A stretch of DNA of 63,768 bases, the filler included, from Octopus bimaculoides (lineage: Eukaryota): the NCBI RefSeq assembly GCF_001194135.2. It is 4 parts of 3 records of this genome, joined end to end, with 100 filler letters (N's around TTAATTAATTAA, not from the genome) between each part and the next. Parts side by side here need not be neighbours in the genome. Positions count along the whole stretch, not along the records: positions 26,614 to 55,600 come from NC_068990.1; 3 more parts are not named here. One strand, given 5' to 3'. Position 1 is the stretch's first letter; each line of letters opens with the position of its first letter. Shown here in pieces: positions 12,581 to 61,932 of this stretch. The notes beneath the pieces were generated by a model. That model searched no databases. It worked only from the letters and a program-made list of their open reading frames with translations, and was not told the DNA's origin. The position numbers and the translations under genes were made by a program.

Positions 12581-13295
12581 TCTTCACATTTATCATTTCC
12601 TACAGTTTTCTGTCTTTGGTTGAAAGTCCAATCTTTTCCAGATTGGCAGTTAGACACTTTCTAAAATAATGAAGGACATCAATGATTAATGGTGCAGATG
12701 TAAATTTATAATCAAAATAGAGAAGATGCAGATTTCGAAGCAATTGTCCTTAAATATCCTCCTTATCCATCTTTTGTAAGAGATCTGTTAACCTCCAAGA
12801 CTACTTTTCTTTTCTCTTCCAAATAACTATGACAGATCCCCTATGGTAGAAGTTCCGATGGAAAGGCTCCACTAATATTTCTCCTGTTAATATGTATGTT
12901 CCATTACAGAAAGGCTGCTTTTTATTATTAATCTCATGACGGTTTTTCCTGCGGATAACATTGCATAGTGATTTACCAACAACATCTTTCTCACAGCAGG
13001 AGGTAGTGCCTCGATGACGCTTTGGGGAAGCAGCTGATTACATGCTTTATGTTCTCCACAGAATAGTGACGTAATCGATATTTGAGATCGTATCTTGGCA
13101 CTTTCGTTTCTCTATTAGATATTCCATAGAGATTTCAAGTGGAAAAGCGTAGCCTTCGGCATGTGACGTGATGTGACAGTCACGAGTCCACGAGTGGCTA
13201 CACTTCATGTTGGTATCAATCCCCCTCTTCAAATTTACGCGAAACATATCCGTACCCAAACTTTCGTGTGGTTATGCAAAGTGATTGCTTTTATA
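12581..13295 (-). mobile_element. Old R4-clade RLE retrotransposon fragment, lineage 1 (CATA-associated)
   Basis: Minus frames read SWTRDCHITSHAEGYAF...EYLIEKR, DVVGKSLCNVIRRK and EDI*GQLLRNLHLLYFDYKFTSAPLII...NLEKIGL, collinear with the 51075-52320 copy. The 3' end joins CATACATACATGC. Confidence 0.75.
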
Positions 13296-46165: not shown

Positions 46166-46254
46166 TGTGCGTGTATGTGTGTGTATGTGTGTGTGTCTGT
46201 GTCTGTGTGCACGCGCGTGTGTACATGATGTATACATACGTACGCTTTTACATA

Positions 46255-46482
46255 CATGTGGTGGCCAGAACAATCTGGAATAGGATAAGAAAAAGTACCA
46301 ATAAAGTTCACCATCACGAGGCCCATGGCCCAAAAGATTATTTGTGGAACTAAATAATTAAAAGAGCCAAGAAGTAAAAACATAATTTGCCAGATATTAT
46401 TGTATGGAACTAAGGAAGATTGATAAGGAGCTTCCAAATCCAGTACCCAAGATAGACTTTCAGGTTCATACTTATTATCATC
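46255..46482 (+). mobile_element. Old, internally deleted R4-clade RLE fragment, lineage 1
   Basis: A single frame reads HVVARTIWNRIRK...YLWN*IIKRAKK*KHNLPDIIVWN*GRLIRSFQIQYPR*TFRFILIII, versus HDVVAK.I.NAIRR / WWN.SIK...CKHNRPDIV / G.L.RNLQLLYP. The 5' junction is TACATACAT|GTGG. Confidence 0.7.
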
Positions 46483-46641
46483 ATTATTATTATTATTATT
46501 ATTATTATTGGAGCAGCAGGACATTTACCAGCCTGACTGGGGTAAAGCATGTCTAAACTTGAGTTCTTGCGGAGAGAATACAACAAATGACGGGTCTACA
46601 AATGATCACGATATCTGGGACACATATACAGAACCACAAAT

Positions 46642-46757: not shown

Positions 46758-47645
46758 CGTGATAGATATTTATATAAACAGAAAAATAGACAGTTCTAAT
46801 TAGATAATTTCGCCTCGTTATCAGATTTATGTTAGTTTTCAGCGTGGTATACACTTCTTTCATATACCTCCTATCAAGCAGTCAATCTATCCATCTATCT
46901 ACTTGTGTATCTATAAACTCACAAACATAAACACACAAACTTTCACCCACTCCTACGCACGCTCATATATTCCTCTATGTATACATACAAATATGCATAC
47001 ATGCATGCATATGTACACAGATACTTTAGAAAGAGTTGTATGTGTGTGTGTTGTGCATATGTGTACGTGTGTATGTATATACATACATATGTATGTGTGT
47101 GTATATATACATGTACATACATACGTGTGTGTTTGGAGGGGTGCATGTATATGTGTGTGAGTGTGAATGTGCGTGAATGCACTCTCGTTTGTTTGTGTGA
47201 ATGAATAGAAACTCGTTCCCTTCCCAAGTGTCAGGTGATCTTTTTGGCTCCCTTACCAAAAAAAAAAGAAAAAAAAAATCCCCACCAACTTTACGCAGTT
47301 CTCCTCTCCTCCATCTCTCACTCATAATGGTTCTTTACTCCATTCCTTATCACATGTTTCTGTTGAAGAAATATGCCTTCGTTTCAATAAATTTTGAAAA
47401 TATTGAAGAATGTCTCTTCAGGTACATAAATAAATAAATAAAAATTAAAAGTCTCACTAGAGATTCGGTATTACGTATCGCCAAATGTCCGTCCACTTTG
47501 AGAATGAGTAAAAACAGAGAAAAGTTGAAAAATTCAAAAATGAACGTGAAAATTCTAGTTTAGAGAAAATGACGTAACGAGCCATCGCTGTTGTAACTGC
47601 CGAGAAAGAAAAGGAAGTACACATACACATACACATACACATATA

Positions 47646-48050
47646 GGCGCAGGAGTGGCTGTGTGGTAAGTAGCTTGCTTACTAACCACATGGTTCCGGG
47701 TTCAGTCCCACTGCGTGGCACCTTGGGCAAGTGTCTTCTACTATAGCCTCGGGCCGACCAAAGCCTTGTGAGTGGATTTGGTAGACGGAAACTGGAAGAA
47801 GCCAGTCATATATATGTACATATGTATGTGTGTGTATATGTCTGTGTGTCTGTATTTGTCCCCTCAACTTCGCTTGACAACCGTTGCTGGTGTGTTTACA
47901 TCCCCGTAACTTAGCAGTTCGGCAAAAGAGACCGATAGAATAAGTACTAGGCTTACAAAGAATAAGTCCTGGGGTCGATTTGCTCGACTAAAGGCGGTGC
48001 CCCAGCATGGCCGCAGTCAAATGACTGAAACAAGTAAAAGAGTAAAAGAG
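47646..48050 (+). mobile_element. SINE family B, full length
   Basis: Reference copy: tRNA-like head, caccttgggcaagtgtcttc core, internal microsatellite and tail aagtaaaagagtaaaagag. Confidence 0.9.
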
Positions 48051-50142: not shown

Positions 50143-50989
50143 TTGTGTATGTTTATAAATATATATACATACGTACATTCATATATGCATGTGTATATAT
50201 ACACATGATTACAAAACACATAAATAAATAAATATGCACACAACATATACTATGATATACACACATACACACATACACACACGAACACACACGTGCACAT
50301 ATACAGTGTATGTAAATTAAATTAGTCACAAAACTATCATATAATTATGTCAGTGAAGCTCCTGTGGGGAAACACCGTTTCATACTTATTTATTCAAGAT
50401 ATTTTTCTTCGTATCAAAAATATATATAATACGTACATGTGTCTATAGATGTGTATGTATATTTGATTACATACATATCTAGTTGGACAAACTAGACACG
50501 CGCATAAAACATACGCATTATATATGTATATATATATCATGTATATGTCTAGTTTGTCCATATATATAAATATTATATTATATTATATTATATATATATA
50601 TACACACACATATACATACGAAGCACACTTATATGCACGCGCAAACACAAACAGAAACACATGTAAACGCATATCTGTAGCGCCACTGACAAAAATAAAA
50701 TCTAACTGTAGGATCACTCTGTATATTTAAGTACAGTCTCTCCTTTTACTTATTTCAGTGATAAATCTGCGGCCATGCTGGGGCAACACTTTCAAGGATT
50801 TAGATGAACAATCGACCCCAGTTCTGTTTTTTTTTCTTTTCTTTTTTTTTTTTTTTTTTTTTTTTTTTTNNNNNNNNNNNNNNNNNNNNNNNNNNNNNNN
50901 NNNNNNNNNNNNNNNNNNNNNNNNNNNNNNNNNNNNNNNNNNNNNNNNNNNNNNNNNNNNNNNNNNNNNNNNNNNNNNNNNNNNNNNNN

Positions 50990-51042
<53 letters not shown>

Positions 51043-51074
51043 TACATACATACATACATACACATGTATGTATG

Positions 51075-52320
51075 ATTTTTCTTTGAGTTTTATTTATGTT
51101 CTAAAGAGAGTTCAAGCCGGTCTCTAACAAAGCGAGAAGACAATTTGAGTTGAGAGAGTTCCCGGTGTTTGTATATATGTGGTTCTGTTGATGTTTTGGT
51201 TGAACTGTCGATGCCTACATCCAAGTGTGTGCGTCTATTCACATAAGAGTTTTAAATGGAGAATATTTGGAATGTTTTTGAAACCTTCAATGTGCTACTA
51301 ATAGATTAGATTTGGAGAATCCGTGTCAGATTCTTTCGCTCTTTCTTCGTGAAGCCAAGAATTTCTTGGTTTTTGTGCAAATTTGTTGGTACATAACCTA
51401 ATGCACCTATGTTAACAGGTACAAATGAAAATTCACAGTCAGGGTACAAGAGCTGTAAGTTCCACCTTAATCCACCATAAATGTTCTCTTTTTCCAGGAC
51501 TTTTGATTGTACAATCATATCCACTGGGCAGCTGGCCTCCACAAAAGTGCATGACTTTTGTCCACAGTCTCAGGGAACAATATTAGGTCTGTTATGTTTG
51601 CACTAAATTGCTCTTTTTATAGAAATGTTCCACCATCATTCCTTGTTTGAATACCTGCTGGTCCTGACAGGCCTTTGATGTATACGTCAGGTCAATTCTC
51701 CTGCGGATAGCATTGTAAATAATCTTTGCAACTACATCATGCCTCAAAGGCAGGTAGTATCTCGTAGACGTTTTGGGAAAGCTGCTGATGATGTGGCTGA
51801 CATCTTCCACACTAGTATGGCAGCGGAGGTTTAGCAGTATTTTTGTGTCTCTTGTTTATCAGGTATTTAATAGCTACTTCCTGTTCATGAATTGCGAAGT
51901 CATATCCTTCTAGGTGAGTATAACGTATCTGTCCCAGGTCCAGGAGAGGCCACTCTTCTTGTCTATGCTGTCGTTTCCCTCTACCTTGCGGAATATGCAC
52001 TCATGCATTGCTTTTGTTGGTATGATGCCTCATTCAAGCATCTGTTTGGGTAGACTAGTGCAGCCTCCTTTGGGTCACATAAGACAGTTGTATTCTCAGA
52101 GTACCCGCACAGCAGTTTTTCTCCAACGCCGGATGTTGGTGCATTCACGTTTGAGTAACAATTGAATCTATTCACTTCTTTCATTACTTTTCAGCTGGTG
52201 TTCTCTGAGTGATACAATGCGACATTCAAAGGCTGTTTGGACCGACTTCATGCCTCTCCTGCCATCACTTAGTCTCACATAGATCCGATTGGTGTTGCTG
52301 TTAATATGGAAGTTGCCATT
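51075..52320 (-). mobile_element. 5'-truncated R4/Dong-clade-like non-LTR retrotransposon (RT thumb end, CCHC, RLE, 3' UTR), lineage 1
   Basis: GNFHINSNTNRIYVRLSDGRRGMKS, HLEGYDFAIHEQEVAIKYL, EDVSHIISS...RYYLPLRHDVVAK and CKHNRPNIV..VEASCP.D....K..EK...Y...LQLLYP...FVPVNIGALG. Stop at 51252-51254 and a 3' UTR of about 177 bp. Flanked by TATG repeats on both sides. Confidence 0.85.
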
Positions 52321-53213
52321 TGTATGTATGTATGTATGTATGTATGTATGTATGTATGTATGTATGTACCATTCAACTATGGTAGTAGTTGAATAATATT
52401 CTTAAGGACCCAATTTACTCACACGCAGAATCTTTCAGAGCTTGTCGCTAATTCAGTTCTTAACTAAATTGAAAATGGTTAGCAGTTTTGAAGAGGACTG
52501 GTCCCTAGCTACATTTTGGCATAAAAGAAATTGAGATTTGGTCCAGTAGAAAAAGTTTATACCGAAATTTGTAGCAACGTTATAGGAAAATAAGTAACGC
52601 CACCAATCAAGTTTAGATCTAAATAACTTGTTTATTTTAAAAGCAAAGTATATTTATCTTAGTTTCAATGATAGAAGAAAGCGTGAAGTTTTGTTCTCTT
52701 GCGACAAAAATTTATATCAAAAAAGTTGTAAGGTAAAATATCATGAAAATATATATAAGGCAAAAAACTGGATCTAAGTGTAATTAACTTTTTTATTTAA
52801 AAAACAAACTATATTTTAATTAAGCTTAAATGATAGAGCTCAATTCAAGAAATTTCATGGTATCAATCTCATGCAATGAAGTTTTAAAAGAAAAACGTTA
52901 TGAGTGTTTGTTTCTGAGATTTGAGGATGATAATATAATTCTTTACTTTTTATTGAATATAATTCTAGAGGACCTTTAATATATGTCACCTGCATCATTG
53001 AGGTAAGGAAAAAAATTATCAGTGACACCGCTAATTGACACATTATTAATTAGCATAATAGCATAACTTGAAAAATCATGGACTACATGGAAAAATGCAA
53101 GCAAGACAAATAATATTCTTAAGATTTTAAACCTGGAAAAGTGCAGCGAAAATCAAAACAAGAACGTATCTATTTGTTTTCAATAATTTCTGGCTGATTT
53201 GAACGTGGATATA

Positions 53214-54452: not shown

Positions 54453-54767
54453 TGAGGGGTGTGACTGAGTGGTTAAGGTATTCAGCTTATGGCCATTCAG
54501 ATGTGAGTTTCAGTTCGTGGATCGTTGTGTCCTCGAGCAAAAAATTATTCCGTTGCACGTTGCACTGTATGCATAAGAAGTCTAGCAGGCCGAAACTTCG
54601 AAGTTACTACCACCTTTCTTTATGTAAAATGTAATAAATGTGTACTCTACAAAAAATATTGCGTAAATCTTCACTTTAATGTTCAATTATCTTTATTATA
54701 ACTCAGCATAAACGCAAACATTAATCTACACGCCCACACACACATACATACATACATACATACATAC

Positions 54768-55032
54768 GCCATCAATGGAACTGTAAAGATATGTAAAAGT
54801 TTCCAAAAATTTAGCACATAAATACATATGCATGCATCTAGACATAAAAACGCATCCATAAAACAAACATACAAATCTGCGCATGCACTAACACCAAATA
54901 CTGCACACACACACATATGCACAAATACCTAGATGATGTTGATAAAAGTTCCAATGAAGGAGCCTTGAATCTATATTAGAGTCCGGCTCTTTCTCTATGG
55001 ACAAGAAATACAGAAATGAAACTGATTGATAA
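54768..55032 (+). mobile_element. 3' end (265 bp) of a young R4-like lineage 1 subfamily, inside (CATA)n
   Basis: Reads AINGTVKICKSFQKFST* followed by a 3' UTR, homologous to the ORF end of the 51 kb copy (SSTLKVSKTFQIFSI*). (CATA)n at 54743-54767 and CATACATGCATG from 55033. Confidence 0.8.
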
Positions 55033-55084
55033 CATACATGCATGCATGCATACATACTTACGTACGTATAATTATATATATGCT

Positions 55085-55700
55085 TCAGTATTTGGCTGCG
55101 GCCATGCTGGAGCACTGCCTAAAGGAGTTTTAGTCGAACAAGTTGATCTCAGGACTTATTTTTCAAGTCTAGTACTTATTCTATCAATCTCTTTTGCTGA
55201 ACCACCTAGGTTTCGGAGACGTAGACACACCAATACCGGAAGTCAAGCGGTGACGGGGAGACAAACACAGACACAAATACACACACTCATAAATATATAG
55301 ATATATATGTGACGGAGTCCTTTCAGTCTACCAAATCCACTCCCGTGGCCATAGTAGAAGACACTTGCCCAAGGTGCCACGCAATGGGACTGAACCCAGA
55401 ATAATGTGGTTAGGAAGCGAGCTTCTTACCATACAGCCAGACCTACGCCTATATCTTTTACGTGTTTCAGTCAGTGGACGGCGGCCATACTGGGGCACCG
55501 CCTTGAAGAATTTTTAGTCGAATGAGCAGACCCAGTAATTTTCTTTTTTCTTTTTAGCTTGGCACTTATTCCATCAGTTTATTTTGCTGAGCCGCTAAGT
55601 NNNNNNNNNNNNNNNNNNNNNNNNNNNNNNNNNNNNNNNNNNNNTTAATTAATTAANNNNNNNNNNNNNNNNNNNNNNNNNNNNNNNNNNNNNNNNNNNN

Positions 55701-61674: not shown

Positions 61675-61932
61675 TTATCAATCAGTTTCATTTCTGTATT
61701 TCTTGTCCATAGAGAAAGAGCCGGACTCTAACATAGATTCAAGGCTCCTTCATTGGAACTTTTATCAACATCATCTAGGTATTTGTGCATATGTGTGTGT
61801 GTGCAGTATTTGGTGTTAGTGTATGCGCAGATTTGTATGTTTGTTTTATGGATGCGTTTTTATGTCTAGATGCATGCATATGTATTTATGTGCTAAATTT
61901 TTGGAAAGTTTTACATATCTTTACAGTTCCAT
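61675..61932 (-). mobile_element. Second copy of the young R4-like 3'-end element, inside (TATG)n
   Basis: Three substitutions versus 54775-55032 by manual alignment. (TATG)n at 61655-61674 and from 61931 onward. Confidence 0.85.

What the first reader, a model, noticed from the sequence alone, without database searches (positions are those of the whole stretch)
51064..52368. RLE retrotransposon apparently targeted to (CATA)n tetranucleotide microsatellites
Seen: this 1.25-kb R4/Dong-like fragment has TATG repeats at both junctions, which read CATA on the element's sense strand. Four other copies of the lineage (12581-13295, 46255-46482, 54768-55032, 61675-61932), on both strands, also abut CATA in the same relative orientation. 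Where the 3' UTR survives, the junction is ...AA(T)|CATACAT each time. Known: RLE elements are often sequence-specific, and Dong-type R4-clade elements are reported in TAA repeats. Inference: this is a cephalopod lineage whose endonuclease targets CATA repeats. I do not recall such a target being described, but cannot check.
Basis: partly seen in the sequence, partly recalled or inferred. Interest (0 to 1): 0.8.

Follow-up and report, generated by a model that had tools for sequence, protein, structure and literature searches.

The report
Retrotransposon lineage that inserts into CATA microsatellites
The fragment is a dead copy of a jumping gene (a LINE with a restriction-like endonuclease) whose whole lineage, here and in at least ten other public datasets, sits inside (CATA)n microsatellites in one fixed orientation; this is a target I could not find described for this class of element.

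Summary
Window 51075-52320 (minus strand) is a 5'-truncated, frameshifted copy of an RLE-type LINE. It keeps the C-terminal ~355 codons (CCHC motif, RHD, PD-(D/E)XK nuclease) and a ~180-nt 3' UTR. On its sense strand it is flanked by (CATA)12 upstream and CATACATACAT downstream.

Two more degraded copies in the piece (54768-55032 and 46258-~46590, both + strand) also abut sense-oriented CATA. The chance of this is about 1e-10, even in this microsatellite-rich DNA.

I fetched 13 relatives by protein similarity alone, from ten other datasets including the octopod Argonauta hians. In all 16 copies, every visible junction (14 5' and 14 3') abuts CATA in the sense orientation. Three ~99%-identical copies of one family include one full-length and two truncated at different points.

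The lineage shares a covarying 3'-UTR hairpin. Two sister branches sit in (CTTA)n instead, and more distant relatives end at TAA repeats, as Dong does.

It is a new target variant of a known kind (microsatellite-specific RLE LINEs). R4/Dong versus HERO membership, and absence from Repbase/Dfam, could not be checked.

The parts
52321..52368 (-). 5' flanking microsatellite. It reads (TACA)12, which is (CATA)n, on the element's sense strand.
51075..52320 (-). Body of the 5'-truncated, decayed RLE-LINE copy. It corresponds to about position 785 to the end of a ~1150-aa ORF, plus the 3' UTR.
51255..52317 (-). ORF remnant spread over three frames, with several stops and frameshifts. The last residues are KTFQIFSI*.
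51724..51822 (-). CCHC zinc-knuckle remnant and RHD motif (C..EDVSHIISSFP..RYYLPLRHDVVAK). The first Cys pair is partly lost and the last Cys is mutated to Phe.
51309..51600 (-). Restriction-like endonuclease core (NRPNIV ... VEASCPVD ... EKENIYG ... IGALG).
51075..51254 (-). 3' UTR, ending ...CAAAGAAAAAT.
51117..51141 (-). Decayed copy of the lineage's conserved 3'-UTR hairpin (CTT-CTCGCT-TTGTT-AGAGAC-CGG; 4 of 6 pairs left).
51064..51074 (-). 3' flank CATACATACAT on the sense strand (either target or element tail).
54738..54767 (+). 5' flanking (ACAT)7.5 of the second copy.
54768..55032 (+). Second copy, severely 5'-truncated. It holds the last 16 codons (INGTVKICKSFQKFST*) plus a 214-nt 3' UTR with the hairpin at 54963-54986.
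55033..55065 (+). 3' flank of the second copy: CATACATGCATGCATGCATACATAC...
46249..46257 (+). Short sense-oriented TACATACAT at the 5' junction of the third copy, within a degenerate ACAT-like stretch.
46258..46590 (+). Third copy, an old RLE-domain fragment (VVARTIWN..KDYLWN..NLPDIIVWN..IIIGAAGHLP). It is interrupted by an (ATT)n expansion of its own Ile codons. Its 3' end was not identified.

Best explanation
What it is. The locus holds three dead copies of a lineage of non-LTR retrotransposons. The lineage encodes one ~1150-aa protein with, in order: an N-terminal three-helix domain with no zinc finger, a reverse transcriptase, a CCHC knuckle, and a C-terminal restriction-like endonuclease. 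It integrates specifically into (CATA)n microsatellite arrays, always with CATA on its sense strand.

Shown here:
- The domain order and intact ORFs in relatives.
- Sense-oriented CATA at every visible 5' and 3' junction of 16 copies.
- 5' truncation at many different points, which is the signature of target-primed reverse transcription.
- A 3'-UTR hairpin kept by compensatory changes.

Inferred by analogy with R2 and Dong:
- The protein binds its own RNA through the 3'-UTR hairpin.
- The N-terminal domain and/or the RLE recognise the repeat.
- The RLE nicks the (TATG)n bottom strand.
- The freed 3' end pairs with a short CAUA tail on the RNA and primes cDNA synthesis.
- Premature termination gives the truncated copies seen here.

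Insertion into a neutral repeat spares genes. Tails left at each insertion may extend the target arrays.
For: Window copies. Chance estimate about 9e-11.

Relatives found by protein similarity only:
- L001, L008, L026: one ~99%-identical family. One copy is full-length. The other two are truncated at element positions ~555 and 1473. All three abut CATA on both sides.
- L002.
- L003 and L004: intact 1161-aa and 1133-aa ORFs.
- L007, Argonauta hians.
- L009, L010, L012.
- L023, L024, L025.

Domains: RVT_1 only and no APE. The best PDB sequence matches are R2 proteins at E 1e-20 to 1e-27. The CCHC and PD..D/E..K regions align weakly to R2.

Hairpin: 88% of cells paired versus 30-40% when the partners are slid; 6 of 6 pairs show double changes; 0 of 500 shuffles reach the observed value.

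Tree: two deep CATA clades, each with 100% bootstrap.
Against: - No biochemical evidence, and no empty-site comparison. The nick position, the target-site duplication or deletion, and the module that reads CATA are all unknown.
- The main copy's 3' CATA is only 11 bp. L007, L009 and L026 also have short or degenerate 3' tracts, so part of the 3' CATA may be an element-borne tail.
- Many relatives sit on ~4-kb short-read contigs that simply end in the repeat, so the wider context is unseen.
- No genome-wide count was possible in the source genome.
Confidence: 0.85

Rival explanations
1. Chance adjacency plus an element-encoded 3' tail. The genome is full of ACAT-type microsatellites, the element merely ends in a CATA tail, and the 5' repeats are coincidental.
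For: The piece holds 57 CATA-class tracts of at least 8 bp and 137 TRF rows. Several 3' tracts are very short.
Against: The probability per junction is about 0.01, and about 9e-11 jointly. All 14 visible 5' junctions carry sense CATA, including copies truncated at different points and copies from ten other datasets.
Confidence: 0.02
2. Passive accumulation. Insertion is not sequence-specific, but copies survive preferentially in microsatellite-rich, gene-poor or low-recombination DNA, as was proposed for Waldo-A/B near CA repeats.
For: This idea exists in the literature for another LINE (PMC3812793). The window is repeat-rich.
Against: Passive retention does not predict base-exact abutment of one particular tetranucleotide. 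It does not predict strict strand orientation at 28 of 28 junctions, or the same habit in two clades that are only ~38% identical. L026 sits in an isolated array within otherwise unique DNA.
Confidence: 0.03
3. Homology-directed capture rather than endonuclease specificity. Transcripts carry a (CAUA)n tail that anneals to pre-existing nicks or replication intermediates in (CATA)n arrays. Under this view the RLE is not what selects the site.
For: Every element ends directly at CATA, so a templated tail is plausible. The phase at the 3' junction is constant while the 5' phase varies, as annealing would predict.
Against: The CCHC and RLE motifs are invariant or nearly invariant across the family, and the ORFs are intact in L003 and L004. 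This argues that the nuclease is needed. Sister branches with (CTTA)n flanks would have to change the tail and still find nicks. None of this is decisive.
Confidence: 0.1

Closest known systems
Dong (R4 clade; Bombyx mori, Anopheles, Biomphalaria, ostracods, cnidarians)
   Same: It is an RLE-type LINE with a single ORF and no N-terminal zinc finger. A diverged Myb/SANT-like N-terminus has been reported for it (PMC7998251). It inserts into a microsatellite in a fixed orientation. The more distant relatives I retrieved (~30% identity) end at TAA repeats.
   Different: Dong's target is the trinucleotide (TAA)n (PMC3812793, PMC7998251). Here the target is the tetranucleotide (CATA)n, with (CTTA)n in sister branches. 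Clade membership by RT phylogeny was not tested.
Waldo (WaldoAg1/2, WaldoFs1; R1 clade)
   Same: It targets ACAY, that is ACAT/ACAC-type, microsatellites (PMC3812793). This is essentially the same repeat.
   Different: Waldo carries an APE-type endonuclease and belongs to the R1 clade. The present family has no APE domain and has a C-terminal RLE. The shared target is convergent.
Togen ((TG)n, fish) and some HERO families (leech)
   Same: These are RLE-encoding LINEs reported to be microsatellite-specific (PMC4640811).
   Different: Their repeats differ or are unstated. Their relationship to this family is unknown. HERO membership cannot be excluded with the tools at hand.
R2 (28S rDNA)
   Same: It is the mechanistic paradigm: RT plus CCHC plus RLE, binding of the 3'-UTR RNA, and bottom-strand nick followed by TPRT. 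R2 proteins are the best PDB sequence matches.
   Different: R2 has N-terminal zinc fingers plus Myb and targets a unique rDNA site. Only the RT region aligns significantly. The RLE region aligns at E of about 0.05.

Membership tests
RLE-encoding non-LTR retrotransposons (R2/R4/NeSL/HERO/CRE group) | Reverse transcriptase domain of LINE type | tested here: met
   RVT_1 at E 4e-26 and 2e-25 in the full-length relatives L004 and L003. R2 proteins are the best PDB hits. The window copy itself is truncated downstream of the RT.
RLE-encoding non-LTR retrotransposons (R2/R4/NeSL/HERO/CRE group) | C-terminal CCHC motif followed by a PD-(D/E)XK restriction-like endonuclease, with no APE domain | tested here: met
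   CRLC..ED..H....C, RHD, NRPD, E..CP.D and EK..Y are conserved in the alignments. A profile aligns these to the R2 CCHC and RLE regions, though weakly (E 0.05). No APE Pfam hit was found. The motifs are recognisable but mutated in the window copy.
R4/Dong clade | Groups with R4 and Dong in an RT-domain phylogeny | not testable with these tools
   No R4, Dong or HERO reference sequences are reachable. Word-indexed searches returned only family members and then APE LINEs. The representatives library has no names.
R4/Dong clade | Single ORF, no N-terminal zinc finger, diverged Myb/SANT-like N-terminal domain (PMC7998251) | tested here: inconclusive
   There is a single ORF with no C2H2 pattern. 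A conserved ~60-aa N-terminal block has invariant W20 and W50. The AlphaFold model has three helices (pLDDT 77). The Foldseek hit list includes four Myb domains (TM 0.5-0.6), but no hit is significant (best Myb E 3.7). Pfam finds nothing.
Dong sensu stricto | Inserts into (TAA)n | tested here: not met
   All 16 copies are in (CATA)n. Only the outgroups L015, L016 and L019 end at TAA-type repeats.
HERO clade | Groups with HERO references in an RT phylogeny | not testable with these tools
   No reference sequences are available. Some HERO families are said to be microsatellite-specific (PMC4640811), so this remains a live alternative label.
Waldo / R1 clade (ACAY-specific) | N-terminal APE endonuclease | tested here: not met
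   No Exo_endo_phos hit in L003 or L004. The nuclease is a C-terminal RLE.

The most novel reading that the evidence does not exclude
An old, widely distributed clade of RLE LINEs has kept strict, oriented specificity for the tetranucleotide microsatellite (CATA)n across lineages that are only ~38% identical. It has switched at least once to (CTTA)n, a one-base change in the repeat unit. It carries a covarying 3'-UTR hairpin that is probably its RT-binding signal. None of this appears in the searchable literature. If so, it offers a natural paired system (CATA readers versus CTTA readers) for working out how an RLE/Myb-like module reads a 4-bp repeat. It would also be a candidate microsatellite-directed insertion tool.
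Probability: 0.45. Interest if true: 0.6.

Novelty: new variant of a known kind. Interest (0 to 1): 0.5.

Why it matters
Site-specific RLE LINEs such as R2 are being developed as gene-insertion tools. How their modules choose a target is an open mechanistic question. The family described here offers:
- a simple 4-bp repeat as target;
- many intact natural variants;
- sister lineages whose target differs by a single base.

That makes it a tractable comparative system. It also bears on how microsatellite arrays and the elements that live in them may amplify each other. Dong-R4-type LINEs are among the most active transposons reported in Octopus vulgaris (PMC13282606). For genome annotation, it explains a recurrent association between "Dong-R4-like" fragments and ACAT/TGTA repeats.

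Tried and rejected
- DNA-level blastn between the window copies found no significant similarity. They are old or belong to different subfamilies, so relatedness had to be shown at protein and RNA-structure level.
- Pfam on the stitched window protein found nothing.
- Rfam at permissive E-values on eight relatives found no HDV-like or other ribozyme, only spurious mir-297 matches on the repeats.
- A scan of viral contigs found no relatives.
- Pfam on the N-terminal domains found no Myb hit. Foldseek on the N-terminal model gave no significant match, although Myb domains are among the top hits.
- Attempts to reach named R4, Dong or HERO references through the protein searches failed. The key older papers (Dong 1993, Kapitonov 2009, Biedler 2015) are not held.
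- Literature searches for ACAT or CATA together with non-LTR elements found nothing relevant.
- I considered that the (TACA)12 might be internal to the element, because alignments run through it to 'TIVEW'. I rejected this as most likely chance, since no RT homology follows upstream.
- I looked for the 3' end of the 46258 copy beyond the (GATA)n tract and did not find it.

Full report
**1. What is in the window**

The piece is very rich in microsatellites: 137 TRF rows in 29 kb.

At 52321-52368 there is a perfect (TGTA)12, and at 51064-51074 ATGTATGTATG. On the minus strand both read (CATA)n.

The 1.25 kb between them, translated on the minus strand, gives an ORF remnant spread over three frames. 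Its recognisable motifs are:
- GNFHINSNTNRIY..DGRRGMKS
- HLEGYDFAIHEQEV
- C..EDVSHIISSFP..RYYLPLRHDVVAK
- NRPNIV
- VEASCPVD
- EKENIYG
- IGALGYV
- KTFQIFSI*

This is the post-RT linker, CCHC knuckle and restriction-like endonuclease (RLE) of a non-LTR retrotransposon, followed by a ~180-nt 3' UTR.

Pfam has no model for this region. The stitched translation finds 24 homologues at 34-46% identity and aligns with them end to end. tblastn E-values reach 4e-54.

A family HMM scanned over all six frames of the piece finds nothing upstream of 52401 on the minus strand. The copy is therefore 5'-truncated at about residue 785 of a ~1150-residue protein.

**2. The other two copies**

Copy 54768-55032 (+):
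- It starts with the last 16 codons of the same ORF (INGTVKICKSFQKFST*; HMM E 0.008).
- It continues through a 214-nt 3' UTR.
- It lies between (ACAT)7.5 and CATACATGCATGCATGCATACATAC.

Copy 46258-~46590 (+):
- It encodes VVARTIWN..KDYLWN..NLPDIIVWN..IIIGAAGHLP, the RHD-to-RLE stretch (tblastn E 6e-9).
- Its 5' end abuts TACATACAT.
- Its 3' end is lost beyond a (GATA)n tract.

The three copies are not alignable at DNA level, so they are old or belong to different subfamilies.

**3. Chance**

In the 26,281 non-N bases, a random point on a random strand has at least 8 bp of sense-oriented CATA on its outer side with p of about 0.0097. Five such junctions give about 9e-11. The microsatellite-rich background does not explain the pattern.

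**4. Relatives elsewhere, retrieved by protein similarity only**

| Locus | Source | 5' junction | 3' junction |
|---|---|---|---|
| L008 | ERZ25878469 | (CATA)n, full-length copy | (CATA)n |
| L001 | ERZ25878469, 98.9% identical to L008 | lacks the first ~554 bp, abuts >700 bp of (CATA)n | (CATA)n |
| L026 | ERZ25067561, 99.4% identical to L008 | truncated at element position 1473, abuts (CATA)19 | CATACATACATATATAT, then unique DNA |
| L002 | ERZ2271440 | CATA | CATA |
| L003, L004 | JGI Ga0073926, intact 1161-aa and 1133-aa ORFs | CATA | CATA |
| L007 | Argonauta hians BAAFZT010000047.1 | (CATA)15\|ACACGTGG | AAAAAAGAGA\|CATACACACA... |
| L009 | ERZ25072740 | CATA | short CATA |
| L010 | ERZ25068966 | CATA | off contig |
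| L012 | ERZ2271440 | off contig | CATA |
| L023 | ERZ2271971 | off contig | CATA |
| L024 | SRR25018306 | CATA | CATA |
| L025 | ERZ17082947 | CATA | CATA |

Counting the window, 14 of 14 visible 5' junctions and 14 of 14 visible 3' junctions carry CATA in the sense orientation.

The 3' junction is always A-rich sequence followed by CATA. The 5' junction falls in any phase of the repeat.

The 5'-truncated copies, cut at different internal positions, rule out an element-encoded 5' repeat.

**5. Anatomy of intact members**

- One ORF of ~1130-1220 aa.
- Pfam sees only RVT_1, plus a weak zf-RVT match at the CCHC motif. There is no APE domain.
- The best solved-structure sequence matches are R2 proteins (E 1e-20 to 1e-27, RT region).
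- A profile of the C-terminal domain aligns weakly to the R2 CCHC and RLE segments.
- The N-terminus has no zinc finger. It has a conserved ~60-aa block with invariant R9, R12, Y14, W20, N25, G41, W50, P55 and L64.
- AlphaFold models this block as three helices (pLDDT 77).
- The Foldseek hit list includes Myb domains at TM 0.5-0.6, but none is significant.

This architecture matches what Schön et al. describe for R4/Dong (PMC7998251). Without reference sequences I could not place the RT in a phylogeny, and HERO is not excluded.

**6. A conserved RNA element**

About 45-50 nt before the 3' end, clade-A members share CCTT-N6-loop(TTGTT, TGGTT or AGGTA)-N6'-CGG. This group includes both window copies that retain a 3' UTR. 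The stems differ between members but stay complementary:
- GCTATA/TATAGC
- GCTGTA/TACAGC
- GCCACC/GGTGGC
- ATCCCA/TGGGAT
- ATCACC/GGTGAT

On a 10-sequence alignment, the counts are as follows:
- 88% of cells pair, against 30-40% when the partners are slid.
- All six pairs show double-sided changes.
- 0 of 500 shuffles reach the observed score.

By analogy with R2, this is most likely the RT-binding signal. That role is inferred. Clade B (L012, L023, L024) has a different hairpin.

**7. Evolution of the target**

An NJ tree (812 columns, 100 bootstraps) gives two deep clades, each with 100% support and each in CATA:
- Clade A: L002, L003, L004, L007, L008, L010, L025.
- Clade B: L009, L012, L023, L024.

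Two relatives are flanked by (CTTA)n instead:
- L005 at its 5' end. It nests inside clade A with 73% support.
- L011 at its 3' end. It branches separately.

CATA therefore looks ancestral, with one or two one-base switches of the repeat unit.

More distant relatives (~30% identity) were recovered as eukaryotic contamination in bacterial assemblies. They end at TAA-type repeats:
- L015: ...AAAAAAAA|TAATAATAA
- L019: ...CACAACA|AATAATAATAAAAATAATAA
- L016: ...CACGACA|TAATAGTAATG

This is the Dong habit. It supports a Dong-like affiliation but is only suggestive.

The C-terminal domain has 143 representative clusters at E<=1e-30 and 3436 at E<=1e-3. The wider group is large.

**8. Mechanism**

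Shown:
- Oriented insertion into (CATA)n.
- 5' truncation.
- Conserved RT, CCHC and RLE motifs.
- The covarying 3' hairpin.

Inferred:
- Protein binds the hairpin.
- The repeat is recognised by the N-terminal domain and/or the RLE.
- The (TATG)n bottom strand is nicked.
- The nicked end pairs with a CAUA tail on the RNA, and TPRT follows.

No ribozyme was detected at the 5' ends. How the RNA 5' end is made is open.

The nick position and any target-site duplication cannot be read inside a repeat. L026 may show a duplicated CATACATATATAT edge.

**9. Comparison with the literature**

Microsatellite-specific LINEs already described:

| Element | Clade | Endonuclease | Target | Source |
|---|---|---|---|---|
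| Dong | R4 | RLE | (TAA)n | PMC3812793, PMC7998251 |
| Togen | NeSL-related | RLE | (TG)n | PMC4640811 |
| some HERO families | HERO | RLE | microsatellites, repeat not stated | PMC4640811 |
| Waldo | R1 | APE | ACAY | PMC3812793 |
| Mino | R1 | APE | AC | PMC3812793 |
| Kibi | Tx1 | APE | TC | PMC3812793 |
| Koshi | Tx1 | APE | TTC | PMC3812793 |

So ACAT-type repeats are a known LINE target, but for an APE-type R1-clade element. RLE elements are known to target other repeats.

Dong-R4 LINEs are reported as abundant and recently active in Octopus vulgaris (5 families, 1129 recent insertions; PMC13282606). That paper does not mention a target.

Three full-text searches found no description of a CATA/ACAT-specific RLE LINE. 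Repbase Reports and Dfam are not searchable here, so prior annotation there cannot be excluded.

**10. Verdict**

- The copy in the window is dead.
- The lineage is real and widespread. It is best described as a new target variant of the known class of microsatellite-specific RLE LINEs.
- The origin of the window is consistent with an octopod: a SINE at 47753-47810 is 96.6% identical over 58 bp to Argonauta hians DNA. The lineage itself is not shown to be cephalopod-restricted.

Noticed in passing
window 46472-46509: The (TTA/ATT)12.7 microsatellite inside the third copy sits exactly on the conserved 'P-I-I-I-G-A' codons of the RLE domain. It reads IIIIIIII-GAAGHLP. It therefore looks like a slippage expansion of the element's own ATT Ile codons rather than a foreign insertion.
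   Followed up: partly
L005:1-59 and L011:4431-4453: Two sister subfamilies of the CATA lineage are flanked by (CTTA)n instead, L005 at its 5' end and L011 at its 3' end. This is a one-base change of the repeat unit. L009 also has a mixed (CATA)n(CTTA)n(CATA)n array upstream.
   Followed up: partly
L013-L019 (genome-contig hits): Contigs filed under bacterial genomes carry eukaryotic RLE-LINE ORFs and long eukaryote-style microsatellites, for example (CTT)89. Examples are Streptomyces narbonensis JCM 4147 NZ_BMSF01000045.1, a Dehalococcoidia MAG (CAXXBX01, contigs up to 138 kb), Cyanobacteria bacterium J06614_10, and a Saprospiraceae MAG. These look like host or eukaryote contamination of the assemblies.
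   Followed up: no
window 47640-47810; also 50760-50800, 55080-55130, 55470-55520: There is a tRNA-like SINE (ggcgcaggagtggctgtgtggtaag...ggttcagtccc...). Its tail at 47753-47810 is 96.6% identical over 58 bp to Argonauta hians DNA (L007:11441-11497). A second recurrent motif, cggccatgctggggca(c/a)..gcc, occurs next to poly-T. Both suggest an octopod origin of the window.
   Followed up: partly
window 51036-51075: Directly beyond the main copy's 3' CATACATACAT, the same tetranucleotide continues in the opposite orientation. This gives a near-palindromic junction (CATACATACATGTGTATGTATG...), followed by (GT)n and a 120-N assembly gap. It could be the original target structure or an assembly artefact.
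   Followed up: no
L008:2450-2506 and L008:6816-6873: The same ~57-bp sequence (CAAGGCTGAGTCTCTACTGGACTACACCTTATGTTT.GGTCCCCTCTGGTGCTGG) lies outside the microsatellites on both sides of the full-length element. The order is X-(CATA)n-element-(CATA)n-(GATA)n-X. It may be a SINE-like repeat whose tail is the microsatellite, or a local duplication.
   Followed up: no
L002, L003, L004, L008, L010, L012 repeat flanks: Rfam mir-297 (and mir-1277, sno_ZL1) give sub-threshold matches on the reverse strand of plain (CATA)n arrays. These are spurious repeat-driven hits that an automated annotation could pick up.
   Followed up: yes
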